From Octopus sinensis (lineage: Eukaryota), in the NCBI RefSeq assembly GCF_006345805.1, contig NW_021836867.1, forward strand, positions 1-42,909: a stretch of DNA of 42,909 nucleotides, read 5' to 3'. Below, one piece after another: positions 12,316 through 40,333 of the stretch. The notes under the pieces were generated by a model that worked only from the letters and a program-made list of their open reading frames with translations, was not told the DNA's origin and made no database searches. The position numbers were made by a program, and so were the translations under genes. The stretch's first letter is position 1. Each line of letters opens with the position of its first letter.

Positions 12316-12923
12316 TTGTTTCAGTCATTTGATTGCCGCCATGTTGGGACACCATCTTGAAGGATCTTTGTCGAACAAATCTACCTCAAGACGTTTTTTT
12401 TTTAAAGAATAGTACTTATTCTATCGGAGTCTTTTTGCCGGACCGCTAATGTTACGGGGATGTAAACACGCCAACACCGGTTGTCAAGTAGTGGTAGGGG
12501 ACTAACAAACACATATACGAAAGGCTTCTTTCAGTTTCGGTCTAACTAAATCCACTTACAAGGCTTTGGTTTGCCCGACGCTATAGTAGAAGTAACTTGC
12601 CCAAAGCTCCACGCAGTGGTATTGAACCCGGCACATGTGGTTGTGAAGTAATGTTCTTACCTCTATTTCTTTACTACCCACAAGGGGCTAAATACAGAGT
12701 GGACAAACAAGGACAGACAAACGGATTAAGTCGATTATATCGACCCCAGTGCGTCACTGGTACTTATTGAATCGACCCCGAAACGATGAAAGGTAAAGTG
12801 GACCTCGGCGGAATTTGAACTCAGAACGTAACGGCAGACGAAATACGGCTACGCATTTCGCCCGGCGTGCTAACGTTTCTGCCAGCTCACCGTCTTGAAT
12901 GTTCTTACCTCACAGCTACGGCT
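12316..12923 (-). mobile_element. SINE family D (tRNA-like head, CORE-like TTGGGCAAGT segment, internal microsatellite), interrupted by SINE A
   Basis: Homologous to 16941-17097, 23306-23850 and 37640-37935. The head is split by the insert at 12664-12897. Confidence 0.75.
12664..12897 (-). mobile_element. Full-length SINE A (A1 tail) with 14-bp TSD
   Basis: AATGTTCTTACCTC occurs at 12650-12663 and 12898-12911. Confidence 0.9.
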
Positions 12924-13147
12924 GCCTATGTGTATACCATAAAACACCTTATCCGCTGCAAGAAACCAACTTAGATTTTAATGCTGATATCTTGCGCGAT
13001 ATCTTGGGAAAATGTCTTCTAATGTAACAATGGTTCTTATCCGGGATCCATATGGCCCTTGCAAGTCCATGTAAGACTTTTGAGGATCCAGGGAAGCAAA
13101 ACAGTAAATTGGGATTTCTCAGTACTTTATCATTTTGCTTTACATAA

Positions 13148-13380
13148 GGCGGCGAGCTGGCAGAAACATTAGGACCCTGGGCGAAATGCGCAGCCGTATT
13201 TCGTCTGCCGTTACGTCCTGTGTTCAAATTCCGCCGAGGTCGACTTTGCCTTTCATCCTTTCGGCGTCGATAAATTAAATACCAGTTACGCACTGGGGTC
13301 GATGTAATCGACTTAATCCGTTTGTCTGTCCTTGTTTGTCCCCTCTATGTTTGGCCCCTTGTGGGCGATAAAGAAATAAG
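13148..13380 (+). mobile_element. Full-length SINE A (A1 tail)
   Basis: Head GGCGGCGAGCTGGCAGAAAC, B box TGTTCAAATTCC, and tail GGCCCCTTGTGGGCGATAAAGAAAT. Confidence 0.9.
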
Positions 13381-18957: not shown

Positions 18958-19005
<48 letters not shown>

Positions 19006-19770
19006 TAATGTATGTGTGTGTGTGTGTCTGCGTTTGTGTCCCACCACCGCCTGACAAAACGATGCTGGTGTGTTTACGTCCCCATATCCTAGCGGTCCGG
19101 CAAAACAGACCAGCTTTAAAAAAGTAAGTTCCGGGATCAAATCATTTAAACAAAAATATTAACAACTACGCACACAACAGACACACACACCACACACACA
19201 CACATACATGTATGTGTGTGTGTGTGTCTGCGTTTGTGTCCCACCACCGCCTGACAAAACGATGCTGGTGTGTTTACGTCCCCATATCCTAGCGGTCCGG
19301 CAAAACAGACCAGCTTTAAAAAAGTAAGTTCCGGGATCAAATCATTTAAACAAAAATATTAACAACTACGCACACAACAGACACACACACCACACACACA
19401 CACATACATGTATGTGTGTGTGTGTGTCTGCGTTTGTGTCCCACCACCGCCTGACAAAACGATGCTGGTGTGTTTACGTCCCCATATCCTAGCGGTCCGG
19501 CAAAACAGACCAGCTTTAAAAAAGTAAGTTCCGGGATCAAATCATTTAAACAAAAATATTAACAACTACGCACACACAGACACACACACACACACACACA
19601 CACACACCAACACACACACACACATACATGTATGTGTGTGTGTGTGTCTGCGTTTGTGTTCCACCACCGCCTGACAAAACGATGCTGGTGTGTTTACGTC
19701 CCCATATCCTAGCGGTTCGGCAAAACAGACCAGCTTTAAAAAAGTAAGTTCCGGGATCAAATCATTTAAC
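18340..19770 (+). repeat. Tandem array of 7 x ~200-bp units derived from the SINE D internal/3' region
   Basis: A constant ~125-bp block (CCACCACCGCCTGACAAAACGATG...GGGATCAAATCATTTAA) recurs 7 times, separated by variable (CA)n/(TG)n spacers. Units 19151-19350 and 19351-19550 are identical. The last unit runs into the SINE D tail (GCCCCAGCATGGCC...GAAAC, to ~19840). Confidence 0.95.
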
Positions 19771-20218
19771 ACAAAACCTTTGAAGTCCGTGCCCCAGCAT
19801 GGCCACGGTCTAATGCCTGAAACTATTAAGATAAAAGATCCATTGTACGGTCCTAACGTTTCTAATCAGCACTTTAATTTGAGGAGTTTGTGTGAAAGAA
19901 GGATATAAAATCTAAATGTAATTCGGTTAATATTGTAACAGATACAGCATAAAAATAAAGCAACTCAACTCGGCAAACACTTCCCTGTTCAACTACTCCT
20001 CTTACAACATCTTAAGTTTCGTAAATCCAAGATGACACTCTTCGTATACTCTTTAAATTTTGTCTGTTTTGTCGCATCGGATAGCAGAGTTTTTATTTTG
20101 ACTTTGAATCAATAATCTTCTTGACCGACTAACATTAGCATTTCTATTGCTTCGTTAACCTTACTATTCTGAGATGTTTATACAAAACATTATCCACCGT
20201 ACTTTAAATGCCGATTAT

Positions 20219-20299: not shown

Positions 20300-20692
20300 T
20301 TCTACTGGAAGCGCAAGGCCTCAAATTTTGGAGAAGGGATATAAGTCGATAACATCGACCCCAATTCGTAACTGGTACTGAATTTATCGATCCCGAAAGG
20401 ATGAAAGGCAAAGTCGACCTCGGCGGAATTAGAACTCAGAACGTTGCAACGGGCGAAATACCTATTTCTTTACTACCCACAAGGGGCTCAAGACAGAGGA
20501 GACAAACAAGAACAGACAAAAGGATTAAGTCGATTATATCGACCCCAGTGCGTAACTGGTACTTAATTTATCGACCCCGAAAGGTTGAAAGGCAAAGTCG
20601 ACCTCGGCGGAATTTGAGCTCAGAACGTAACGGCAGACGAAATACGACTACGCATTTCGCCCGGCGTGCTAACGTTTCTGCCAGCTCGCCGC
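20300..20692 (-). mobile_element. SINE A2 copy (20300-20461) interrupted by full-length SINE A1 (20463-20692)
   Basis: Two successive bodies with different tails. The A1 tail begins right after CGAAATAC of the A2 body. Confidence 0.8.
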
Positions 20693-20724
20693 AATAATAA
20701 TAATAATATAATAATAATAATGAT

Positions 20725-21870: not shown

Positions 21871-21913
21871 GAAAACAAGTCAACGAAAATTATATTTATA
21901 GATGAGCTGGAAA

Positions 21914-22381
21914 GCGGCGAGCTGGCAGACACGTTAGCACGCCGGGCGAAATGCTTAGCGGTATTTCGTTTGTCGTTACGTTCTGAGTTCAAATTCCGCC
22001 GAGGTCGACTTTGCCTTTCATCCTTTTGGAGTCGATAAATTAAGTACCAGTTTCGCACTGGGGTCGGTGTAATCGACTTAATCCGTTTGTCTGTCCTTGT
22101 TTGTCCCCTCTGTGTTTAGCCCCTTGTGGGTAGTAAAGAAATAGGTTATTTGGCGGCGAGCTGGCAGAAACGTTAGCACGCCGGGCGAAATGCTTAACGG
22201 TATTTCGTCTGCCGTCACGTTCTGAGTTCAAATTCCGCCGAGGTCGACTTTACCTTTCATCCTTTCGGGGTCGATAAATTAAGTACCAGTTACGCACTGG
22301 GTCGATGTAATCGACTTAATACCTATGTCTGTCCTTGTTTTTCCCCTCTATCTTTAGCCCTTTGTGGGTAATAAAGAAATA
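21914..22381 (+). mobile_element. Two head-to-tail full-length SINE A1 copies (21914-22143, 22152-22381)
   Basis: Each has a head, B box GAGTTCAAATTCC, body and ...GTGGGTA(G/A)TAAAGAAATAG tail. Confidence 0.9.
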
Positions 22382-22464
22382 GATATTGTAGTTATTTATA
22401 TTAATTTATTCTTAATTGCTGGTCTGTTGCCTAAGTAAAAACCTTTAATTCTCAATTCGCAGAT

Positions 22465-23181: not shown

Positions 23182-23995
23182 TTTTCTACTCCAGGCACAA
23201 TGCCCGAAATTTCGGGGGAAGGGGCCCAATCGATTAGATCGACCTCAGAACGCAACTGGTACTTAATTTAACGACCGTGAAATGATGAAAGGTAAAGTCA
23301 ACCTCGGTTGTGTGATAAGAAGCTTGTTTCCCAATTACATAGTACTAGGTTCAGTCCTACTGCGTGACACATTGGGCAAGTGTCTTCTACTATAGTCTCG
23401 GGTCAACCAAAGCCTTGTGAGTGAATTTGGTAGACGGAAACTGAAAGAAGCTCATCGTATATATGTGTGTATGTGTGTGTGTTTGTCCGCCCCCACCCAT
23501 CTGTTTTTTTTATTGCCCACAAGGGGTTAAACATAGAGGGGACAAACAGGGACAGACAAACGGATTAAGTCGATTACATCGACCCCAGTGCGTAACTGGT
23601 ACTGAATTTATCGACCCCAAAAGGATGAAAGGCAAAGTCGACCTAGGCGGAATTTGAACTCAGAACGTAACGGCAGACGAAATACTGCTAAACATTTTGC
23701 CCGGCGTGCGAACGATTCTGCCAGCTATCCGCCCTCCCCCATCACCACTCGAAAACCGGTGTTGGTGTGTTTACGTCCCGGTAACTTAGCTGTTAGGCAA
23801 AAATGATCGATAGAATAAGTACCGGGCTTAAAAAAAAAATAAGTACTTAGTGACTCCGCCGAGGTTGACTTTGCTTTTCATCCTTTCGTGGGGTGGGGGG
23901 TCAATGAAATGATACCAGTTGAATACTGGTGTCGATGTAATCGACTTATAACCCCCTCCTGTGAAATTACTGGCTTTGTGCCAAAATTGGAAACC
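23182..23995. mobile_element. Nested SINE cluster: A2 fragment (-), SINE D (+, 23306-23850) interrupted by SINE A1 (-, ~23505-23735), A2 fragment (+)
   Basis: Manual homology to the family A and D copies elsewhere in the window. Confidence 0.7.
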
Positions 23996-24480: not shown

Positions 24481-25430
24481 AATTCGACGTAAAGTGGGGC
24501 GAGCTGGCCGAAACGTTAGCACGCCGGACGAAATGCGTAGCCGTATTTCGTCGGCCGTTACGTTCTGAGTTCAAATTCCGCCGAGGTCGACTTTGCCTTT
24601 CATACTTTCGGGGTAGATAAATTTAGTACCAGTCGCGCACTGGGTCGATGTAATCGACTTAATCCCTTTGTCAATCCTTGTTTGGCCCCTTCTGTTTAGC
24701 CCCTTATGGGCAATAAAGAAATAAGAAACGTTAGCACGCCGTGCGAAATGCTTAGCGATATTTTGTCTACCGTTACATTCTGAGTTCAAACTCCGCTGAG
24801 GTCGACCTTGCCTTTCATCCTTTCAGATGTACCAGTTTCGCACTGGGGTCGATGTAATCGACTTAATCCTTTTGTTTGTCCTCTCTATGTCTAGCCCCTC
24901 CCCTGTGAGCAATAAAGAAACAAATTTGACGTAAATGCGGCGAGCTGGCAGAATCGTTAGCACGCCGGGCGAAATGCGTAGCCGTATTTCGTCGGCCGTT
25001 ACGTTCTGAGTTCAATTTCCGCCAAGGTCGACTTTGCCTTTCATACTTTCGGGGTAGATAAATTTAGTACCAGTCGCGCACTGGGTCGATGTATTTGACT
25101 TAATCCCTTTGTCTGTCCTTGTTTGCCCCCTCTGTTTAGCCCCTTGTGGGCAATAAAGAAATAAGAAACGTTAGCACGCCGTGCGAAATGCTTAGCGATA
25201 TTTTGTCTGCCGTTACATTCTGAGTTCAAACTCCACCGAGGTCGACCTTGCCTTTCATCCTTTCAGATGTACCAGTTTCGCACTGGGGTCGATGTAATCG
25301 ACTTAATCCTTTTGTTTGTTCCCTCTATGTTTAGCCCCTCCCCAGTGGGTAATAAAGAAATGAATTTGACGTAAATGCGGAGAGCCGGCAGAAACGTTAG
25401 CGGTATTTCGTCTGTCTTTACATTCTAATC
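24481..25430 (+). repeat. ~441-bp higher-order repeat (x2 plus a partial third) of a SINE A dimer
   Basis: Unit starts AATT(C/T)GACGTAAA are at 24481, 24923 and 25363. Private variants are shared between units: CATACTTTCGGGGTAGATAAATTTAG in the first monomer and the TTTCAGATGTACCAG deletion in the second. Confidence 0.9.
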
Positions 25431-26567
25431 AACTTATATGGCCGAAATGCTTCTTGATTAGCAAATAACGTACATTGGGAAAAGAATTAATGTTACGACT
25501 TCTATATTTTTTCTACAACCAGATACATATATGACAAGATGAACGCCATTTAATCGTGCTTATATCGGCTGCTTATTACAAGAACACACTCCGGTAATTT
25601 CCTACAAATTAGGACAATTAATTCACCAGATCAATCTTATAAAACGTAAAAGGATAGAACAGTACACAGAACTTAAGATATTTAATAGTAGTGAAGTGTT
25701 TAGTCGCAGGTCAATTCTGACTGAGTAGTCTTATAAATATTAACTTTTTAGGTTTGTGTCCTTCCTGTCAAGATCGATGTGTAAGGATTTGAAGTTAACT
25801 CAGTTCTGATGTGTATATATAATACCTATATAGAGTGAGATAAACTGAGGTGTCAAGAATTAATAAAATGTAATGGCTTTGGAGGGAAACAGCGCTGCAG
25901 AGAAATGGTCAACTGTAAAATTGTGCTGTAGCTGAAAGTCCCAATATAATTATAGACTGGGTTAGCTGTCGATCTCTGCGGTTTTGTACAAGCAAAGTAA
26001 GCAAAAACCAGCAGTGGCTAACGAAGAACGAGCGAAGAAATAAAGTAGCTCAAAGAAGCTAGAAATTGCAGCAAACTCAAATCGCAAAAGAAAGAAGGAC
26101 ACATTTGATAATGTTGCATTAGAGACAACATACGTGAAAGACGAGATGGTGACGTTTAAAACAAAGATCAATTTACAACGCAAATCTATTTCAGATTTAA
26201 AGAGGCTAAAGGTTGTGTAGAATTAAATCTTTTCTGTGTATAAACAGAAAAACTACAGCCAGAAATGACTTGTTCTTCCGTATCAGACGTTATAAGCTAC
26301 ATAAGCAAAATTAATAACACGGTATAAAAGATTGAATGTTTATTTATACAAAAAAAAAAAATGGCTGTCAGCAAAATTAAAATATGAAATGACACCTAAC
26401 TTCGAAGAATTTTCTATAAAAACCTAAATTTTTCTAAGGAACGTTTGTAGCTTGCAACAGAAATTTCTGTACACTGCATTATACTGAAATCAAACAAAAG
26501 ATTTTATAAGGAGTACGATTAATCGTTTATGAGCGAACTGATATGCATACATATATACATATATATA

Positions 26568-26797
26568 TATTTCTTTACTACCCACAAGGGGCTAAACACA
26601 GAGGGGACAAACAAGGACAGACAAACGGAATAAGTTGATTAGATCGACCCCGTGCGTAACTGGTACTTAATTTATCGACCCCGAAAGGATGAAAGGCAAA
26701 GTCGACCTTGGCGAAATTTGAACTCAGTACGTAACGGCAGACGAAATACGGCTACGTATTTCACCCGGCGTGCTAACGTTTCTGCCAGCTCGCCGCC
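26568..26797 (-). mobile_element. Full-length SINE A1
   Basis: Complete tail, body and head (…CCAGCTCGCCGCC). Confidence 0.9.
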
Positions 26798-26994
26798 TTA
26801 TATACATACATATATATCAGTTGATTCGACAATAAAAACAGTATTGATGTGATTGTTAACTGGAGTATTCTGCTTACGTTATTTTACAATAGGATGGGAG
26901 ACAATATTTAGCAATAATTCAGGATTGTTTATACAAGTTTCTTTGAAATATCTGGAGCAAAGCGATCAGTTGGCCTTAATAAACATAGGAATAG

Positions 26995-27323
26995 GAGATC
27001 CCCTTCGGTCATGATTGCACCTAGAAAGTTACCCTCCGTGGCATAAGCCCGGGCAAGGTTGTTTGTGGAAGACCAGCTGTAGCCGATGCATACCGGCATC
27101 CCCTCTCCATACCACTGATGTTATCCAAGGATAACAAGGCAAAGGGGCCGATACAGCTTGGCACCAGTGACGTCGCAACTCATTTCTACAGCTGAGTTAA
27201 TTGGAGCAACGTGAAATAAAGTGTCTTGCTCAAGAACACAACACACAGCCCGGTCCGAGAATCGAACTCACAACCTCACGATCGTAAGCTCTACGCTCTA
27301 ACCACTGAGTCATGCACCTTCAC
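26995..27323 (-). mobile_element. tRNA-derived SINE family C with CORE-like domain
   Basis: The rc head is GTGAAGGTGCATGACTCAGTGGTTAGAGCG with B box GAGTTCGATTCT. Segment 27181-27242 (rc GTTGTGTTCTTGAGCAAGACACTTTATTTCACGTTGCTCCAATTAACTCAGCTGTAGAAATG) resembles the CORE motif (TTGGGCAAGTTACTTAACCTC...CTCAGTTTCCTCATCTGTAAAATG). I cannot reliably assign it to the named octopus OK/OR1/OR2 families. Confidence 0.75.
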
Positions 27324-27778
27324 ATAATAAACTTAAAAGGTAATGAATAAATATTCGTCGCATCAAATACCATTCAAATTGGTTAATTTTTTTTTTTTTT
27401 CACTGAAATAATAGGATTATTATTACAGTTCTTCTTTACAACATTTGAGTAAAAACGATACGTATTGCCATAGTTATCGTGAAATCTGTTTTCGAATATA
27501 TTTGTAATACTGTGTTGGAAAAGTATGTTTATGAGATGAAATAGAATTATCAGCCTCTATTTTACAACTTTTAATATTGTCAGTCACTTTTGAATGCTTG
27601 TTTGATTCCTATATTCAGAATTGAGTTTGTGTCAACGAACTATTTATAAAAACAACTCGTCAATATGGCATGAATAGTTTGCGGGTTTTAATAAAAATTA
27701 TAAATAAACACATTTAATATGCTCAGCTTTGATGAGTAGTCGAAGATTCTCAGCTGTCGTCTGTCGAAACCTCGGTGG

Positions 27779-30478
27779 TCATCTTCCAGTTGTCGACTCT
27801 ACGCTCGACGATCTCTCGTCTGGCGATTCCTCGACCAGCAATTCCACGACCGGCAATTCCTCGTCCGGCAATATCAAGTCCGGCATTTCCTCGTTCGACG
27901 ATTCTTCGTCCACCAATACCAAGTTCGGTATTTCCTCGTCCGACGATTCCAAGTCCGGCAATTCATCGTTCGGCAATATCAAGTCCGGCAATTCATCGTT
28001 CGGCAATATCAAGTCCGGCAATATCAAGTCCGGCATTTCCTCATCCGACGATTCCACGTCCGACGATTCCTCGTCCGACAATTCCAAGTTCGGCGATTCT
28101 TCGTCCGGCAATTCCAAGTCCGGCAATTCCACGAACGGCAATTGCACAGTCGGCAATTGTACGACCGGCAATTCCCCGACCGGCACTTCCAATGCTGGAA
28201 ATTCCAAGTCCGGCAAATCCACGACCGACTCATCCACGACCGGCAACTCTAAGTCCGGAACTTCCGCGTCTGCTGATTCTCTTTTGTCACTAGAAGGTTC
28301 CTGAGGTTGTACACTGTAAGAGGTTTCTCCATGTTCAGCCTGATGTAAATCCTGTTCTCTATTTGTATTGTGAAGCTCCTCCCTCACCGACGTGCTGGGC
28401 ACATAATCATTTGCCAGCGAGTCACCGTGCCATGCGCTTGCTAACGGGCGGTAGTCGTATGTGCTTAACATCGGGTCGTCATGATGCAACTCGCTTGTCG
28501 ACGTACTGCAAGACGGCCTGTTTATTGACAAACAGGCCGACTGTCCACTTGTTGGTGATTTTTGAGAATGCATACTTCCTATCATGTACGACTCGCCGCA
28601 TGCCCAACAGGATCTGGACTGATTATTTTCGCTTGCTGCAGAACAGGTATGTGGTGCTCCACGAACAGAACTTGTTGGACTGAGACAGTGTAATCTGTTT
28701 CTTGGCTGCATGTGATGAAACCTATTTATCGACACATCGAATGCCTGTCCAGTTGTAGGTCTGGGCTGTACCTGTATACATGTATCTCTGGTCTGATTCG
28801 ATGCACTTACAGACGTGGTCTCGGTTTGAACACCAACAGATCTCATCTGAGTTTGTGTACCTTCAGATCTCCTTTGGATCCGTTCTATTTCTGCCCATAT
28901 AGAATACCTTTCAAGTAACTCGATGAAAAAATATAGTTCTTCTATCACCCTATCGTGATATCTGTTTAAATCTCTTAAGTATTGACTGTCCATTAGCATT
29001 GTATCGTTCAATCTGTTCATCGACGCACTTCGTGTGTGGCTGCTCATTGATGCATCATAATTTTGTTCGTTCAATGTTGAGCCGTAAGATCGTGCATTCA
29101 AAGCTATTCTTGGATGATATCGCCTCGCCAATGTGCTGGAAGTCTGAGATAAATATAACACGTCATCGAACTGAAGGTTCACAGGGGAGCTTTCCCTTCT
29201 CCTACTCTCTAGCGAGCACCCACTTCTATTCTGTGGTGGGCTGCAACGTCTCCCTCTAGCTCGCGTGCATCCAGTACCTACATTCATTTCCACGATTCTA
29301 ACATTTTTCTTCACTCGTGAGATTTTACTTTTCCCGCGCACTGGCGTACTTCCAGGCAATCCGCGCGCTGGAGCGCTTCCACGCATTCCGCGCGCTGGAA
29401 CGCTCCCACGCATTCCGCGCGCTGGAGCGCTCCCACGCATTCCGCGCACTGGAGCGCTCCCACGCATTCCGCGCACTGGAGCGCTCCCACGCATTCCGCG
29501 CGCTGGGACGCTTCCACGCATTCCGCGCGCTGGGACGCGTCCACGTATTCCACGCACCGGCGCGTTTCCACGCATTCCGCGCACCGGCGCGCTTCCACGC
29601 ATTCCGCGAACCGGCGCGCTTCCACGCATTCCGCGCACCGGCGCGCTTCCACGCATTCCGCGCACCGGCGCGCTTCCACGCATTCCGCGCGCAGGAGCGC
29701 TTCCAAGTATTCCGCGTATTGGCTGTCTTCTACGTATGCCGCGCACAGGCCGTCTTCCCTGCGTTCCGTGTACTGCCCGTCTTCCCTGCGTTCCGTGTAC
29801 TGACCGTCTTCCACGCATTCTGCGTACAGGAGCATTTAAACGTTTCCTGGGTACCGGCGCGCTTTCGCCTTCTCTTTTCTCACTTTCTCGTGTGCTAGAA
29901 GCCTGGTTGCTCTCTGGCACTTTGTGGCGTGTTTCTATCATGATCATTTTGGAAGGTGAAGTTCCGCACTCTGTCAGAGGTGGCAGCCTTATTTTTCCTG
30001 ATCTGAGTGTCTCTTCAATTTCTGGCCCGAGCTGGAGACGAAAATCTTCGCTTTTTGAGAAATTATGAACTTCGTAGGGTTGTAGGCTTTTAGACATACT
30101 GGGACGTGGAATGCTGCTCCCTGGTATATTAGCTTCAGGTAGTAGTCTTGATGTACTTAGTTCATGCACCGATTCAGTTTTGATAAGCTTCTCTGGAGTA
30201 TTAAGGGTATCGTCATCAGCTCCATGCCTGTTTGTACTGTGTGAAAGATCGGTTGGCTCGACGCATTTTTCCTTTTTGGGACTAACTGTGGAACGTCTAC
30301 ATGGTGAGTGATGCTTTTCGTTAACTTTTGAGTCCTGAGATGAGACAGCCACTGGATTAGGATCTGCAGTTAAGCCAAGTGGGCAAGTGTCCCCGATTTT
30401 AGATGTAGAAGGTCTAGAAATGTCTTCATTATCCTTCGAATGGGATTCAGTATGATGTTCATCTTCTGAAGAACTCAT
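27779..30478 (-). CDS. 899-aa uncharacterised, predominantly disordered protein: RG-rich 9-mer repeat, short helix plus tandem LC8-type TQT motifs, acidic SIM-like pentapeptide tail
   Basis: A 2.7-kb open frame that includes ~560 non-repetitive codons in AT-rich DNA. Both internal repeats have periods that are multiples of 3 (27 and 15 bp). The ATG has A at -3 and lies 3 nt after a TCTTTTCAG acceptor-like site. ATTAAA signals lie downstream (rc at 27713-27718 and 27687-27692). I recognise no homologue. Confidence 0.75.
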   Translation of the reverse strand: MSSSEDEHHTESHSKDNEDISRPSTSKIGDTCPLGLTADPNPVAVSSQDSKVNEKHHSPCRRSTVSPKKEKCVEPTDLSHSTNRHGADDDTLNTPEKLIKTESVHELSTSRLLPEANIPGSSIPRPSMSKSLQPYEVHNFSKSEDFRLQLGPEIEETLRSGKIRLPPLTECGTSPSKMIMIETRHKVPESNQASSTRESEKREGESAPVPRKRLNAPVRRMRGRRSVHGTQGRRAVHGTQGRRPVRGIRRRQPIRGILGSAPARGMRGSAPVRGMRGSAPVRGMRGSAPVRGMRGSAPVRGMRGNAPVRGIRGRVPARGMRGSVPARGMRGSAPVRGMRGSAPVRGMRGSAPARGMRGSVPARGMRGSAPARGLPGSTPVRGKSKISRVKKNVRIVEMNVGTGCTRARGRRCSPPQNRSGCSLESRRRESSPVNLQFDDVLYLSQTSSTLARRYHPRIALNARSYGSTLNEQNYDASMSSHTRSASMNRLNDTMLMDSQYLRDLNRYHDRVIEELYFFIELLERYSIWAEIERIQRRSEGTQTQMRSVGVQTETTSVSASNQTRDTCIQVQPRPTTGQAFDVSINRFHHMQPRNRLHCLSPTSSVRGAPHTCSAASENNQSRSCWACGESYMIGSMHSQKSPTSGQSACLSINRPSCSTSTSELHHDDPMLSTYDYRPLASAWHGDSLANDYVPSTSVREELHNTNREQDLHQAEHGETSYSVQPQEPSSDKRESADAEVPDLELPVVDESVVDLPDLEFPALEVPVGELPVVQLPTVQLPFVELPDLELPDEESPNLELSDEESSDVESSDEEMPDLILPDLILPNDELPDLILPNDELPDLESSDEEIPNLVLVDEESSNEEMPDLILPDEELPVVELLVEESPDERSSSVESTTGR
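27785..28264 (-). repeat. 15-bp coding minisatellite, 32 pentapeptide units (aa 739-898)
   Basis: ELPDL/ELPVV/ESSDE/ILPND/EMPDL units stay in strict 5-aa register. The plus-strand unit is of the AATTCC(A/T)(A/C)GTCCGGC type. Confidence 0.9.
29333..29863 (-). repeat. 27-bp coding minisatellite, ~19.7 units of SAPVRGMRG (aa 206-382)
   Basis: Counted from the translation. The core (aa 260-376) is homogeneous, the flanking units are diverged, and the repeat is CpG-rich. Confidence 0.95.
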
Positions 30479-30481
30479 TTT

Positions 30482-30770
30482 CTGAAAAGATTCTCACAGA
30501 TGATTTTAGTGACGGATTGGTTTTCTAATATTCCAGTAACCGAGTTAAGTAAGCTAAGCTTGTTTAAAAATAAATGGTAATAAATAATTTCTGGTGTTCT
30601 CGCTTTGGACACAGGTAAGGTTTTATCGCGACAAAAACGTTGTAGAGATGTTTATCGAAAAATACACGGACGACACGCTATGTTGCTAAATGCATTAATA
30701 ATTCAACCGTTGAATGATGGTTTAAATTGGATGAAATACGTGAAGATTTCGATAGGTAATGCATTCTTAC
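30482..30770 (-). other. Candidate 289-nt GT-AG intron in the 5' UTR of the 899-aa gene
   Basis: Minus-strand donor AG|GTAAGA at 30771/30770 and acceptor TCTTTTCAG|AAAATG at 30482/30481. This is motif evidence only. Confidence 0.4.
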
Positions 30771-30885
30771 CTCTGTAAATGAAATGCTGCGTATATATCG
30801 TACATATACAGGTAGAAACAGTAAAACGTAGGAGTGTATCAAAATGGACGAGGATTACGCATGCGTGATGAGTTCAGTGAGGTAA

Positions 30886-35170: not shown

Positions 35171-35261
35171 CTATCTATCTATATATATATAATATATATA
35201 TATATATAATATATATATATCTATATATAATATATTATATATATATATTATATTAGATTAA

Positions 35262-35450
35262 TTAGAGAAAAACCACTATTATGCAAATCAAACAAAGAAA
35301 GACTTAATCCAATACATAAAAAAATTTATATAAATTAAATAAAATAAAATTTAATTTTAATTTTAATTTTATTTAATTTATATAAAATTTTTTATGTATT
35401 GGATGAAGTCTTTCTTTGTTTGATTTGCATAATAGTGGTTTTGTCTCTAA
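35262..35450. repeat. 189-bp near-perfect palindrome
   Basis: TTAGAGAAAAACCACTATTATGCAAATCAAACAAAGAAAGACTT... against its rc ending at 35450 gives ~85-bp arms with 3 mismatches and an AT-rich centre. Confidence 0.9.
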
Positions 35451-35557
35451 ATAATATTATATAGTATTTTACTATAAAATTGGATTCAGTCCTAAATCTG
35501 ATTTTTCCTTGTAAATTTGGATTTATTCCCTAATATTTATTATTATTATTATATATA

Positions 35558-36860
35558 TACGGTGAGAATTTACAAACAATAAAACAAAAGATGAAGACAG
35601 GTGTGTAAACTACAAACAGATGTATTAGTTTAAAGCTCGTGAATTGAGAAAGTCTTTTACGTTTCGAGCCTACGCTCTTTGACAGAAAGGAACACAGAAA
35701 TAAACAGGGAAAGAAAATAGAAAAGGTTTAGTGGCTAGCGATCCATCATGTTGAATGCGGGACAGAGGGGTCACACAGGAGAGCTAGGAAGAAAGGGAGA
35801 TAATAAGTAGATAATAAAAACGAAGGTGCGCATGCGTGTGTATGTAAGAGCGGGTGTGTGCGTGTGGAAGGGGGCTGGTGATCTTGACGTGTGCGTGTGT
35901 GCATGTGTAGGTGCGTCCATGATTGTGTAGGTGCTGGGAAGTGGTCAGTATTAGTGTGTGCGGAGTGGTGTGATGTGGTGTGGTATGGTGGTGTATGTGG
36001 TGGTGTGGTGATGGTGTGGTCTTGTGTGGGGTGGTGGTGATGGCGTGGGGGAAATGAGAATGGGGAAGCAAGGGTGGGGTCTAAAGGATGGGGTGCGGGT
36101 GGGATGTGATGTATAGGAATAGTGGGTTTGGAATGTGTAGGGGTGGTGTAACGAGGGAGGGGGTGACGTTGAAGGAAGAGAGTGGAAGGGAGGTGGGGAA
36201 AAGAGTTGAGCCCATGTGGCGGAAAGGAGCGAAGAGAGAAGATTAATCCCTGCTCACGGCGAAGATGGGAGTCTGGATGGCCCCTGTGCAAGGACAATCC
36301 GAACACAGACAGGTGTTGTAAAGAATGACCGGTAGAGGGGAAATGGCGTGAGATCGGGGTGTCGTTGCTGAGTCTGATGTCTCGGAGGTGTTCCACGAAC
36401 CTGTCAGCCAACGGCGTGCCGTTTGACCGATATATAAAGAAGGGCAGAAAGAGCAGGAGATGCTGTAGATGACGTTGCTAGAAGTGCAAGTGAAGGGGTC
36501 AGTGATATGATAGGGTCGATGATGAGTGCCTGTGATGAGGGTGGTGTTGGAGATGTAAAGGCAAGTACGGCAGTGTAGGCGGGAGCAGGGGAACGAGCCG
36601 GGTTGGGAGGATGGGTTAGGGAAGTAGCTGTGGACCAAGAGGTCTCGTAGGTTGTGGGCTCGTTTGAAGGAGGGGAGGGGTCGGTTAGGGAAGATGTGCG
36701 AAGTGGAGGGGTCGGACAGGAGTCGCGGGAAAGCTCGGAGAGTGGTGCGTTGGAGAGGTAGGGTGGTGGGGCGGTAGATGAGGGGAAACGAGAGACGGGT
36801 GGCGGCGGGGCAGGTGCGGGGAGAGAGAGAGCAAATGCACGGTCCGTGGTAGTACTCTGG
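35558..36860 (-). mobile_element. 5'-truncated Penelope-like retroelement (C-terminal RT-adjacent region, Cys-rich linker, GIY-YIG endonuclease, 3' low-complexity region, terminal hammerhead-like motif)
   Basis: FPLIYRPTT...IFPNRPLPSFKRAHNLRDLLVHS...CSRLHCRTC...NVIYSISCSFCPSLYIGQT (VIY at 36465-36473, YIG at 36426-36434) is followed by a 1-nt frameshift at ~36412 into LADRFVEH...PISRHF...GHS...REQGLIFSLRSFPPHGLN. This is the typical PLE GIY-YIG signature. Confidence 0.9.
35652..35690 (-). ncRNA. Variant-core hammerhead-like motif at the PLE 3' terminus
   Basis: The minus strand reads CTTT-CTGTCAAA-GAGC-GTAG-GCTC-GAAA-C-GTA-AAAG. It is homologous to 17799-17840 and the core is degenerate. Confidence 0.35.
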
Positions 36861-37639
36861 CAAGGGTGGTGTGAATAGTGGTGAGGTGGTATATACGTGC
36901 ATATATATGTGTATGCACAAATTAAAGCACATACATTTACATGGATAAACGTATATTTATAGATGTATGTAAATCTATATACAATACATGTGTTATGTGT
37001 AAGCGAGTGTGTGTGTCTGTGTGTATGTGTTTGTGAGTTTGTGTATGTGTGTGTACAGATAAAGATCGAGATACAGTATTCATAAAACAAATATGATATG
37101 AAAATCCCCCAAACTGAATAACGGCAAGTAAATTAAGGCCCCAGTAACAATGAGCAGAGAAGAAAAACTACGATAACAAGCCCTACTCTCCACCTTTCCT
37201 TGAAAGAAAACATTCGTTAGCACTGTAGCCATCTCTCATCAAGCATGGTCATATGTATTTTAACACTCAGTAAAGAAAATAACACTTAAATCACACACAC
37301 ACACACACACACACACTCCCTACCCGCTACTTAAACAGCTGTTATATGAATAATGAACGGTAAAGACGACAAACTATACGTAATGAATGATAAAACAAAA
37401 CAGACAACAAGGAAAGAGAGGGCAGAACAGAATAAAGGAATATGAGAATAACGGAATAGATGATATAGCGGGAGGTATTGAACTTGAATGAAACCAGCGA
37501 GTGAACATTCTTAAATAAAGTACAAATATTTGTACTTTCCGTAAGGAAGTAAGCTTGTACTCGTTGTCATTAAGCTGGTTGTGTCTTTGAGTAAGGTGAT
37601 TAAACTAATCTTTGCTTATTAATTAAAAAAAATTTAATC

Positions 37640-39418: not shown

Positions 39419-39711
39419 TAATGGATAGGGATTAGTCGATGCCATCGACCCTAGTACCTGATCTGCTACTTTATTTTGATGATCATTGAAGGAATAAAAA
39501 TAAAAATAAATCGATTCCAACGGGAATTTAACACAGAGTCTCAAGGCTCCCACGAGTACCTAATTTATTTTCTCCCACGCCATAACGATTCTGCTAGCTT
39601 GTCCCTGACGATGATACTCCCAAAGACCCACTCAAACGCATACACACTCACACACATGTACACACACACATACACATTTCTACAAACATACACACAATTC
39701 TTATCAATATC

Positions 39712-40333
39712 TATTTCTTTACTACCCACAAGGGGCTAAACAGAGACAAACAAGGACAGACATAGGTATTAAGTCGATTATATCGATCCCAGTGCGTAAC
39801 TGGTACTTAATTTATCGACCCCGAATGGATGAAAGTCAAAGTCGACCTCGACGGAATTTGAACTCAGAACGTACCGGCAGTCGAAATACGAATTTCTTTA
39901 TTGCCCACCGGGGGCCAAACATAGATATGGACAGTACAACTGATGGGATCAGTGAATCGATATGATTTTACATAAATGTGACTTTAAAATAAAATACAAT
40001 ACATAAAAAAATCGAATGGAATACACAGTACAGAAACACACAAATGAAGCGATGATCAAGTTACGCTCCGATCCCACAAGCCCCGATCTACCGCTGATAC
40101 CTTTTATTTTTCCTTTTTTGCCCTCTATTCACACGGTTCCTTGCATGCACAACACTCGTGCAACATGCTTCCAGCTCTTTTGGAACATACACTCCGACAG
40201 ACACCCCTTCTCCAGCCACAGTTTCCTTTTCAAATGAAAAGAAAAGGAAAAAAAAAGATCGTAAATTGTGACCAGAGATGCCGGCTACGCATTTCGCCTG
40301 GCGTGCTAACGTTTCTGCCAGCTCGCCGCCTTG
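39712..40333 (-). mobile_element. SINE A1 with 16-bp TSD, split by an internal LINE 3'-end insertion
   Basis: AATTCTTATCAATATC occurs at 39696-39711 and 40334-40349. The SINE body stops at 39890 and resumes at ~40284. Confidence 0.85.
39892..40250 (-). mobile_element. 3' end of a Tx1/L1-type LINE (last ORF2 codons, 3' UTR, SINE-A-like tail)
   Basis: HLKRKLWLEKGCLSECMFQKSWKHVARVLCMQGTV* (40236-40129) overlaps the end of the 38642 fragment (TGAAAAGGAAA.TG.GGCTG, 22/29 nt). The terminal 34 nt match the SINE A1 tail. Confidence 0.6.

What the first reader, a model, noticed from the sequence alone, without database searches (positions are those of the whole stretch)
27779..30478. Orphan 899-aa multivalent disordered scaffold: RG block + LC8 sites + acidic SIM-like tail
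Seen: a single uninterrupted frame with a strongly basic block (aa 206-430), one short aromatic/amphipathic helix, clustered QT motifs and a strongly acidic tail, with no recognisable folded domain. Established: RG repeats (RNA binding, PRMT/Tudor), LC8 dimerisation motifs and SIMs are each typical of condensate scaffolds. LC8 binding combined with SUMO-pathway links is known for the Drosophila piRNA silencing adaptor Panoramix, which is cited as an analogy only. Inference: a lineage-specific, possibly germline, nuclear or granule adaptor built largely from two in-frame minisatellites. It is the best candidate in the window for an undescribed system.
Basis: partly seen in the sequence, partly recalled or inferred. 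Interest (0 to 1): 0.78.

Follow-up and report, generated by a model that had tools for sequence, protein, structure and literature searches.

The report
Octopus-only disordered protein gene, mis-annotated
The 899-codon reading frame is a real but fast-evolving, almost wholly disordered protein gene so far seen only in Octopus. It is already in the O. vulgaris annotation as a shortened "hypothetical protein". Its conserved core is one helix followed by LC8-type docking motifs, and the RG and acidic blocks are variable coding minisatellites.

Summary
There is an 899-aa ORF on the minus strand (27779-30478) with a basic RG block, one helix, a QT-motif cluster, an acidic tail and no detectable domain.

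It is not undescribed. It is the orthologue of O. vulgaris CAI9737817.1 ("hypothetical predicted protein", 392 aa). That public model splices out a GT..AG segment of 1410 nt in O. vulgaris, which is 1491 nt (497 codons) in the window.

That segment is coding:
- It is open in frame in both species.
- Against a more distant Octopus contig, all 8 indels up to codon 628 are multiples of 3, versus 1 of 11 in the flanks.
- It holds the best-conserved motifs, and these carry synonymous changes inside them.

Overall constraint is weak (dN/dS about 0.66). The distant orthologue loses the frame after codon 628.

The RG array (27 bp) and the acidic array (15 bp) differ in copy number between the window and O. 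vulgaris. They are nearly or wholly absent from the distant orthologue, so they are not the conserved functional core.

The conserved core is an amphipathic helix (aa 498-535) abutting two 8-mers, RSEGTQTQ and RSVGVQTE. Both fit the published LC8 optimum VSRGTQTE.

Germline, SUMO, Tudor and Panoramix-like roles are untested. Interest is moderate to low.

The parts
27779..30478 (-). Full 899-aa ORF (ATG at 30478, TGA at 27781-27779). It appears to be a single coding exon.
   Evidence: The syntenic uninterrupted 862-aa ORF in O. vulgaris is L002:10001-12589.
29864..30478 (-). Unique N-terminal region, aa 1-205, predicted disordered. It includes the conserved island ETLRSGKIRLP (aa 156-166, window 29981-30013) and a short predicted helix at aa 153-160.
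   Evidence: Against L001, the 4 indels are 6, 24, 27 and 6 nt, all multiples of 3. The island has 5 synonymous codon changes and 0 amino-acid changes.
29333..29824 (-). Coding minisatellite of 27-bp units encoding SAP[V/A]RGMRG (aa 219-382, net +41). It is CpG-rich (GC about 0.68).
   Evidence: TRF reports 27 bp x 18.2 at 85% matches. Unit variation by codon position is [4,13,24]. There are 9-aa and 18-aa indels versus O. vulgaris. L001 has only about 4 degenerate units.
29087..29137 (-). Conserved island STLARRYHPRIALNARS (aa 448-464).
   Evidence: 16 of 17 residues are identical to the distant orthologue, with 1 synonymous change.
28874..28987 (-). Amphipathic, aromatic-rich helix, aa 498-535 (YLRDLNRYHDRVIEELYFFIELLERYSIWAEIERIQRR). 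It is a candidate self-association element.
   Evidence: AlphaFold2 predicts a helix, with pLDDT up to 90 in the 210-aa model. The hydrophobic moment is 0.5-0.7 in the N-terminal half, and 8 of 13 heptad a/d positions are hydrophobic.
28823..28873 (-). Two abutting LC8-type 8-mers, RSEGTQTQ (aa 536-543) and RSVGVQTE (aa 545-552).
   Evidence: Pattern and shuffle test. The published optimum is VSRGTQTE (PMC6607443). RSVGVQTETTS is 11/11 identical in L001 and has one synonymous change. The region is predicted disordered.
28766..28780 (-). Third, weaker QT-type site, CIQVQ (aa 567-571).
   Evidence: IQVQP is conserved in L001.
28598..28717 (-). Conserved island HHMQPRNRLHCL (aa 588-599), followed by conserved His/Cys residues up to CWxC (aa 624-627). 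This may be a small metal-binding site (untested).
   Evidence: 12/12 residues are identical, with 2 synonymous changes. AlphaFold2 predicts no fold here.
28314..29804 (-). Segment removed as an intron in the public O. vulgaris model (CG|GTCAGT ... CTCTTACAG|T). It is 1491 nt, or 497 codons, and is open in frame. It is exitron-like or an annotation artefact.
   Evidence: Splicing L002 at these sites reproduces P0002 exactly, and the intron there is 1410 nt, also a multiple of 3.
27817..28270 (-). Coding minisatellite of 15-bp units (consensus VELPD / LELPD / EESSD; aa about 738-892, net about -51).
   Evidence: TRF reports 15 bp x 30.3 and 105 bp x 3.4. Unit variation by codon position is [40,39,17], so there is no sign of amino-acid constraint. 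There are two 5-aa indels versus O. vulgaris. It is absent from L001.
27687..27718 (-). Two ATTAAA poly(A)-signal-like hexamers, 61 and 87 nt after the stop.
   Evidence: They are identical in O. vulgaris, and L001 has an AATAAA in its 3' flank (its exact correspondence was not aligned). The region is AT-rich, so this is weak evidence.

Best explanation
This is a genuine, single-copy protein-coding gene, read as one long exon. As far as public protein sets show, it is restricted to Octopus. The window comes from O. vulgaris or a very near relative.

SHOWN:
- The reading frame is maintained by selection. In the distant comparison, substitutions accumulate about as fast as in the flanking DNA.
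- Purifying selection is concentrated in a few short islands: ETLRSGKIRLP, STLARRY-PRIALNARS, RSVGVQTETTS and HHMQPRNRLHCL.
- The protein is predicted to be disordered except for one amphipathic helix at aa 498-535.
- Two 8-mers of LC8 (DYNLL) docking type follow the helix directly.
- The public O. vulgaris model removes aa 226-722 as an intron, yet that segment behaves as coding sequence.

INFERRED:
- The helix self-associates, and LC8 dimers clamp the adjacent motifs. This would give a parallel dimer or oligomer core, as in other LC8 clients that carry a neighbouring coiled coil.
- The arginine-rich array (+41) and the acidic array (-51) are recent, length-variable additions. They make the chain a block polyampholyte that could bind nucleic acid and self-associate electrostatically.
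- The GT..AG segment may be an exitron. Its removal would yield a short acidic isoform lacking the basic block, the helix and the LC8 sites.

The cellular role is not known.
For: ORF reality:
- The unique codons have 0 stops in frame versus 5-26 in each other frame; P(open) is about 1e-14.

Orthology and synteny:
- O. vulgaris chromosome OX597833.1 is collinear with window positions about 17-40 kb at roughly 85-97% identity across the collinear blocks.
- The same locus there is an uninterrupted 862-aa ORF.

Frame selection:
- Against the distant orthologue L001, 8 of 8 indels up to codon 628 are multiples of 3. In the flanks the figure is 1 of 11. Fisher p = 1.2e-4.

Motif-level constraint:
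- ETLRSGKIRLP has 5 synonymous and 0 nonsynonymous codon changes. Other islands also carry synonymous changes.
- The RG units vary mainly at third codon positions, [4,13,24].

Disorder and domains:
- Mean pLDDT is 34.5. The helix at 498-535 reaches pLDDT up to 90 in the shorter model.
- No Pfam or PDB match was found.

LC8-type sites:
- The cluster has P about 1e-4 in shuffles.
- Both sites share S(-4), G(-2), Q(0) and T(+1) with the published optimum VSRGTQTE.
- Site 2 is invariant in all three species.

The arrays are variable or young.

Orphan status:
- Only P0001 and P0002 were found among 1.84 billion representatives.
Against: Weak overall constraint:
- dN/dS is 0.66 against L001 (CI 0.52-0.84), with nearly flat codon-position differences.
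- Coding mismatch (19.5-23.7%) is about the same as in the flanks (22-24%).
- Window versus O. vulgaris gives 3 synonymous and 13 nonsynonymous changes. dN/dS is 1.2 with CI 0.4-4.6, which is uninformative.

The distant orthologue:
- It has a 4-nt deletion after codon 628 and further frame-breaking gaps. Its product would be 508 aa.
- The C-terminal third is therefore dispensable or already lost there.

Missing evidence:
- No transcript or peptide evidence could be examined.
- The only public model disagrees with the long ORF.
- LC8 binding, helix self-association and phase behaviour are inferences from sequence.
- TQT-anchored peptides often fail to bind LC8 (PMC6607443).
- The alignments behind the structure predictions had only 2-3 sequences.
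Confidence: 0.6

Rival explanations
1. The gene has an exitron or alternative splice. Both the 899-aa unspliced product and an internally deleted product of about 402 aa (N-terminus plus acidic tail) are made. This is compatible with the best explanation and adds a regulatory layer to it.
For: The boundaries are canonical GT..AG. The length is an exact multiple of 3 in both species (1491 and 1410 nt), and there are no stops inside. The public model came from a pipeline that used Iso-Seq and RNA-seq junctions (PMC10700109). These features match the definition of exitrons (PMC4484396).
Against: The splice sites are weak: the donor is GTCAGT and the stretch before the acceptor is purine-rich. The model could be an ab initio artefact of predicting on a repeat-masked assembly. 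No junction reads were seen here.
Confidence: 0.3
2. The public O. vulgaris model is simply right. On this view aa 226-722 is a constitutive intron and the real protein is only the N-terminus plus the acidic tail.
For: The GT..AG boundaries exist, and splicing there reproduces CAI9737817.1 exactly.
Against: The 'intron' is open for 497 and 470 codons in the two species. Within it, the centre's first four indels against L001 are in frame (6, 15, 3 and 3 nt). It contains the most conserved amino-acid islands, and these carry synonymous changes. Its RG units vary mostly at third codon positions.
Confidence: 0.05
3. The ORF is functionless or decaying. It could be a transcribed or untranscribed open frame kept open by youth and by repeat structure, such as a proto-gene or a recent pseudogene.
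For: Substitution rates are near neutral. The distant orthologue has a frameshift and C-terminal decay. There is no homologue outside Octopus. The acidic array shows no codon-position signature.
Against: 8 of 8 indels are in frame versus 1 of 11 in the flanks. P(open) is about 1e-14 for the unique codons, and the frame is open in two species. Some islands show only synonymous change. dN/dS has an upper CI of 0.84.
Confidence: 0.12
4. It is a transposable-element or retroviral ORF, or a recent retrocopy of another gene.
For: The locus is embedded in SINE-rich, repeat-rich DNA. The gene looks intronless. An A13 tract lies about 385 nt after the stop.
Against: There is no TE or any other Pfam domain. 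It is single-copy, with only two relatives among 1.84 billion proteins and no parent gene. It sits at the same syntenic position in O. vulgaris, and its flanks align with the distant orthologue.
Confidence: 0.02
5. It is a Panoramix-like germline silencing adaptor that uses LC8, SUMO and Tudor contacts. The first reader offered this as an analogy.
For: The only support is that LC8-type motifs sit in a disordered protein.
Against: There is no sequence relationship to any non-Octopus protein. The RG and SIM-like blocks are not conserved even within Octopus. No expression data were available.
Confidence: 0.03

Closest known systems
Octopus vulgaris CAI9737817.1 / UniRef100_A0AA36BQ40, 'Hypothetical predicted protein' (chromosome OX597833.1)
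   Same: It is the orthologous, syntenic locus. Identity is 97% over aa 1-225 and 93% over aa 723-899.
   Different: The public model is 392 aa and omits aa 226-722 as an intron. The genomic ORF there is 862 aa and uninterrupted. The window has 3 more RG units and 2 more acidic units.
Multivalent LC8 (DYNLL) clients with a neighbouring self-association helix, for example ASCIZ, GKAP, 53BP1 and dynein intermediate chain
   Same: TQT-type 8-mers lie in a disordered stretch right next to a helix. There are two or three closely spaced sites. Both main sites are close to the published optimum VSRGTQTE.
   Different: There is no sequence homology to any known client. Binding is untested. The two main sites are separated by a single residue, so simultaneous occupancy is uncertain.
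RGG/RG-motif proteins
   Same: There are 31 RG dipeptides, mostly as RGMRG pairs, in a block of net charge +41.
   Different: There is no RGG and no GRG. The array is a young minisatellite that is barely present in a congener.
Exitrons (Marquez et al. 2015, PMC4484396)
   Same: The segment is internal to a coding exon, has canonical splice sites and no stops, has a length that is a multiple of 3, and encodes a disordered region and short motifs.
   Different: Alternative splicing has not been observed here. The only evidence is a single gene model.
Panoramix (Drosophila)
   Same: It is a disordered adaptor with LC8 sites.
   Different: There is no homology and no evidence of a germline or piRNA role. 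The SUMO-related part of the analogy rests on a non-conserved repeat.

Membership tests
LC8 (DYNLL) binding motif | An 8-residue motif anchored by TQT or a variant, with Gln at position 0. | tested here: met
   The sites are RSEGTQTQ (aa 536-543), RSVGVQTE (aa 545-552) and the weaker CIQVQ. The cluster has P about 1e-4 in shuffles. The motif definition and the optimum VSRGTQTE come from PMC6607443.
LC8 (DYNLL) binding motif | Favourable flanks: an H-bonding residue at -4, no bulky hydrophobic at -2, and no proline before the anchor. | tested here: met
   Both main sites have Ser at -4, Gly at -2 and no proline. The rules are from PMC6607443. The preference for a positive residue at -3 is not met (Glu and Val).
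LC8 (DYNLL) binding motif | The motif lies in an intrinsically disordered segment. | tested here: met
   pLDDT is below 50 from aa 541 onward, and no secondary structure is predicted there. This rests on a shallow alignment.
LC8 (DYNLL) binding motif | Physical binding to the LC8 dimer. | not testable with these tools
   Many TQT-containing peptides do not bind (PMC6607443). Calorimetry or a pull-down is needed.
RGG/RG-motif protein | Clustered RGG or RG repeats. | tested here: inconclusive
   There are 31 RG but 0 RGG. The units are VRGMRGS. The definition of di-RG and tri-RG is recalled from memory.
RGG/RG-motif protein | The repeat block is conserved in orthologues, as expected for a functional module. 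| tested here: not met
   Copy number changes between the window and O. vulgaris. The distant orthologue has about 4 degenerate units, and the RG dipeptide appears only once.
SUMO-interaction motif (SIM) | A hydrophobic core, [VIL]x[VIL][VIL] or [VIL][VIL]x[VIL], next to acidic or Ser residues. | tested here: met
   Pattern hits include LVLVDEESS (aa 853) and VVELLVEES (aa 876). The pattern has low specificity and is recalled from memory.
SUMO-interaction motif (SIM) | Conservation, and actual SUMO binding. | tested here: not met
   The acidic array is absent from L001. Its units show no amino-acid constraint. Binding cannot be tested here.
Exitron | [quoted passage not shown] | tested here: met
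   The GT..AG segment at 29804..28314 is open in frame in the window and in O. vulgaris. The definition is from PMC4484396.
Exitron | Both spliced and unspliced transcripts are observed. | not testable with these tools
   Only the public spliced model is available. No reads could be accessed.
Transposable-element ORF | TE protein domains (RT, integrase, transposase, endonuclease) and multiple dispersed copies. | tested here: not met
   No Pfam domain was found. There are two relatives in 1.84 billion proteins. There is no second copy in the window or in L002.
Panoramix | Sequence or profile homology. | tested here: not met
   The profile search returned only the two Octopus proteins.

The most novel reading that the evidence does not exclude
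This would be a young, Octopus-restricted, LC8-clamped scaffold with two tunable properties. Its valency and charge balance would be set by copy-number changes in two coding minisatellites (a +41 arginine block and a -51 acidic block). Its assembly-competent core (basic block, helix and LC8 sites) would be switched off by splicing of a 1.4-1.5 kb in-frame exitron. Together these would form an evolvable on/off condensate module.
Probability: 0.1. Interest if true: 0.55.

Novelty: new member of a known kind. Interest (0 to 1): 0.3.

Why it matters
The practical result is a correction. The public O. vulgaris model for this locus (392 aa) omits about 470 codons that behave as coding sequence, and these include the only strongly conserved motifs.

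Biologically, it is a clean example of a taxonomically restricted disordered protein. Selection keeps the frame and a handful of short motifs, while the rest drifts and coding minisatellites expand.

If LC8 binding and exitron splicing are confirmed, it would give cephalopod biology a tractable lineage-specific LC8 client. Nothing here suggests a new kind of system.

Tried and rejected
1. The word-indexed protein search was limited by its index.
   - With the whole ORF it scored only the 8000 most word-rich candidates and returned one hit, so the repeats may have crowded the candidate list.
   - With the unique centre it returned the same single hit.
   - With the N-terminus it returned nothing, although P0001 and P0002 clearly match.
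   - Its negatives are therefore unreliable. I relied on the exhaustive HMMER scan instead.
2. An exact look-up of the window's own protein found nothing on record.
3. Pfam gave only sub-threshold low-complexity hits on the whole protein and on its pieces (Collagen, Glutenin, Extensin). I rejected these.
4. A PDB sequence search of the centre found nothing.
5. I did not run a fold search. The models contain only one confident helix, so the matches would be meaningless.
6. I considered L001 as transcript evidence and rejected it. It starts in an (AC)n microsatellite and has no poly(A), so it looks genomic. I could not identify its species, because run SRR11869391 appears in no paper.
7. dN/dS between the window and O. 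vulgaris is uninformative, with only 16 differences.
8. Lower divergence in the ORF (about 1%) than in the flanks (about 2.3-3.1%) is suggestive. However, the flanks are heterogeneous, ranging from 0 to 11% per 250 nt.
9. Rfam and tRNA scans of the window found nothing.
10. A search for the protein's accessions in the literature found nothing.
Full report
**1. The observation.**

The 899-aa ORF is real. It lies on the minus strand at 27779-30478 and starts with ATG. An in-frame stop lies 18 nt upstream. The plus-strand reading of the same coordinates is full of stops.

The window is typical repeat-rich eukaryotic DNA, with 117 tandem-repeat rows. This is the only long non-repeat ORF in it.

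The composition claims hold:
- aa 206-430 has a net charge of +55.
- aa 736-899 has a net charge of -51.
- There are 31 RG dipeptides and no RGG.
- Three [TVI]Q[TV] sites fall within 30 residues, which has P about 1e-4 in shuffles.

Two minisatellites with periods divisible by three encode about 35% of the protein:
- 27 bp x 18.2 at 29334-29824.
- 15 bp x 30.3 at 27817-28270.

Repeats stay open in several frames trivially. The 558 unique codons are different. They have no stop in frame, against 5-26 stops in each other frame, and P(open) is about 1e-14.

**2. Relatives.**

Word-indexed searches gave one hit, P0001. It is 508 aa and comes from a 2.5-kb Logan contig, L001.

An exhaustive HMMER profile scan of 1.84 billion representative proteins found only P0001 and P0002. 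P0002 is CAI9737817.1 / A0AA36BQ40, 'Hypothetical predicted protein [Octopus vulgaris]'.

The locus is therefore already annotated, and it is so far restricted to Octopus. That restriction is provisional, because only predicted proteins were searched.

**3. The public model versus the genome.**

P0002 equals window aa 1-225 joined directly to aa 723-899. The implied intron runs from 29804 to 28314 on the minus strand, with boundaries CG|GTCAGT ... CTCTTACAG|T. It is 1491 nt, which is exactly 497 codons.

I fetched the O. vulgaris locus as L002 (OX597833.1:51850191-51872779). Findings there:
- It is collinear with window positions about 17-40 kb, with block identities mostly 92-97% and one block at 85%.
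- Splicing at the same sites reproduces P0002 exactly. The intron there is 1410 nt, also a multiple of 3.
- Unspliced, L002:10001-12589 is one uninterrupted 862-aa ORF.

The annotation pipeline combined Iso-Seq and RNA-seq assemblies with ab initio predictions on a repeat-masked assembly (PMC10700109). The intron could therefore be transcript-supported, or it could be an artefact.

**4. Is the long frame coding?**

I compared the window with L001, whose neutral divergence is about 22-24%.

Evidence for frame selection:
- In coding sequence up to codon 628, indels are 6, 24, 27, 6, 6, 15, 3 and 3 nt, so 8 of 8 are multiples of three.
- The 5' flank has six 1-nt indels.
- The 3' flank has indels of 3, 7, 4, 2 and 19 nt.
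- Fisher p = 1.2e-4.

Four of the in-frame indels lie inside the supposed intron.

Substitutions are barely constrained:
- dN/dS is 0.66 (CI 0.52-0.84), and codon-position differences are nearly flat.
- Coding mismatch is about the same as flank mismatch.

Constraint is concentrated in short islands that carry synonymous changes:
- ETLRSGKIRLP, with 5 synonymous and 0 replacement codon changes.
- STLARRY and PRIALNARS.
- RSVGVQTETTS.
- HHMQPRNRLHCL.

All but the first lie inside the 'intron'.

Within the RG array, unit variants fall mainly at third codon positions, [4,13,24]. In the acidic array they do not, [40,39,17].

After codon 628, L001 has a 4-nt deletion and then gaps of 2 and 22 nt. 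Its product ends at 508 aa. That same contig was assembled in 5 runs, so the frameshift is probably real.

The window-versus-O. vulgaris comparison has too few changes to be useful: 3 synonymous and 13 nonsynonymous.

**5. The repeat blocks.**

- Between the window and O. vulgaris, the RG array differs by 9-aa and 18-aa indels. The acidic array differs by two 5-aa indels.
- L001 has only about four degenerate RG-type units (SAPVRGKYG NKPVRERHK ...) and no acidic units.
- The RG units are much more alike than the species are, which indicates recent expansion or homogenisation.
- The acidic array is more degenerate. It could be older and may have been lost in the L001 lineage.
- Either way, neither block is a conserved functional core.

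**6. Structure.**

- No Pfam family reaches its cut-off.
- No PDB sequence matches.
- AlphaFold2 gives a mean pLDDT of 34.5 for the full length. It predicts only a short helix at aa 153-160 and a long helix at aa 498-535.
- In a 210-aa construct the long helix reaches pLDDT of about 90 and the rest stays low.
- The long helix is amphipathic, with a hydrophobic moment of 0.5-0.7.

**7. Mechanism (inferred).**

Directly after the helix come RSEGTQTQ and RSVGVQTE. Both share S(-4), G(-2), Q(0) and T(+1) with the phage-display optimum VSRGTQTE, and both lie in predicted disorder. Site 2 is invariant in all three species.

A self-associating helix with adjacent LC8 sites is the usual layout of LC8 clients. 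That statement is from my own knowledge, together with the abstracts listed.

I therefore propose an LC8-clamped dimeric core, flanked by drifting disordered arms and by oppositely charged, length-variable arrays. Binding is unproven, and many TQT peptides do not bind LC8.

**8. Verdict.**

- The gene is real and ordinary in kind. It is a taxonomically restricted disordered protein with short linear motifs and coding minisatellites.
- It is already present in public annotation in a probably incomplete form.
- The emphasis on the RG and SIM-like blocks, and the germline/Panoramix analogy, are not supported.

Noticed in passing
window 30482-30776 (minus strand): A strong donor-like site, CAGAG|GTAAGA, lies at about 30776, and an acceptor-like site, CTTTTCAG|AAAATG, ends 3 nt before the start codon. 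The acceptor-like site is identical in O. vulgaris (the donor region was not compared there), and the donor is present in L001. This may be a roughly 290-nt intron in the 5' UTR.
   Followed up: partly
window 12663-12892, 13141-13378, 20463-20710, 21911-22390, 23505-23733, 24482-25401, 26563-26799, 39706-39890: A SINE-like element of about 180-240 bp recurs many times at 88-93% identity. One instance is a 440-bp x 2.1 tandem arrangement at 24481-25401. Single stretches of the O. vulgaris locus hit all of these places.
   Followed up: partly
window 27230-27320 (minus strand), about 470 nt downstream of the stop: A tRNA-like SINE head (GGTGCATGACTCAGTGGTTAGAGCG...GGTTGTGAGTTCGATTCTC) is present. 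ARAGORN and Rfam report no tRNA here. An A13 tract sits just upstream of it, at about 27381-27393.
   Followed up: partly
window 18970-19776: A 200-bp x 3.9 tandem repeat (95% matches) carries CA/TG microsatellites inside each unit.
   Followed up: no
window 36243-36932 (minus strand): A 229-aa ORF contains a Cys-rich stretch followed by YIGQT (…CRTCLYISN…FTCTSSNVIYSISCSFCPSLYIGQTARR…). From memory this resembles the GIY-YIG endonuclease module of Penelope-like retroelements. Pfam gave no hit.
   Followed up: partly
window 29333-29824: The RG-encoding minisatellite is very CpG-rich. There are 4 to 6 CpG per 27-bp unit, and GC is about 0.68 against 0.45 around it. Most A/V alternation between units is GCG<->GTG, which is CpG transition.
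   Followed up: partly
L002 3839-5816 versus window 35189-35547: About 2 kb of the O. vulgaris locus has no counterpart in the window. This is an insertion/deletion difference between the two genomes, next to AT-microsatellite-rich DNA.
   Followed up: no
window 28598-28717: Conserved His and Cys residues (H588, H589, H597, C598, H610, C624-x-x-C627) are kept in the distant orthologue. That orthologue's frameshift falls immediately after the CWxC. This may be a small zinc site. AlphaFold2 predicts no fold here.
   Followed up: partly
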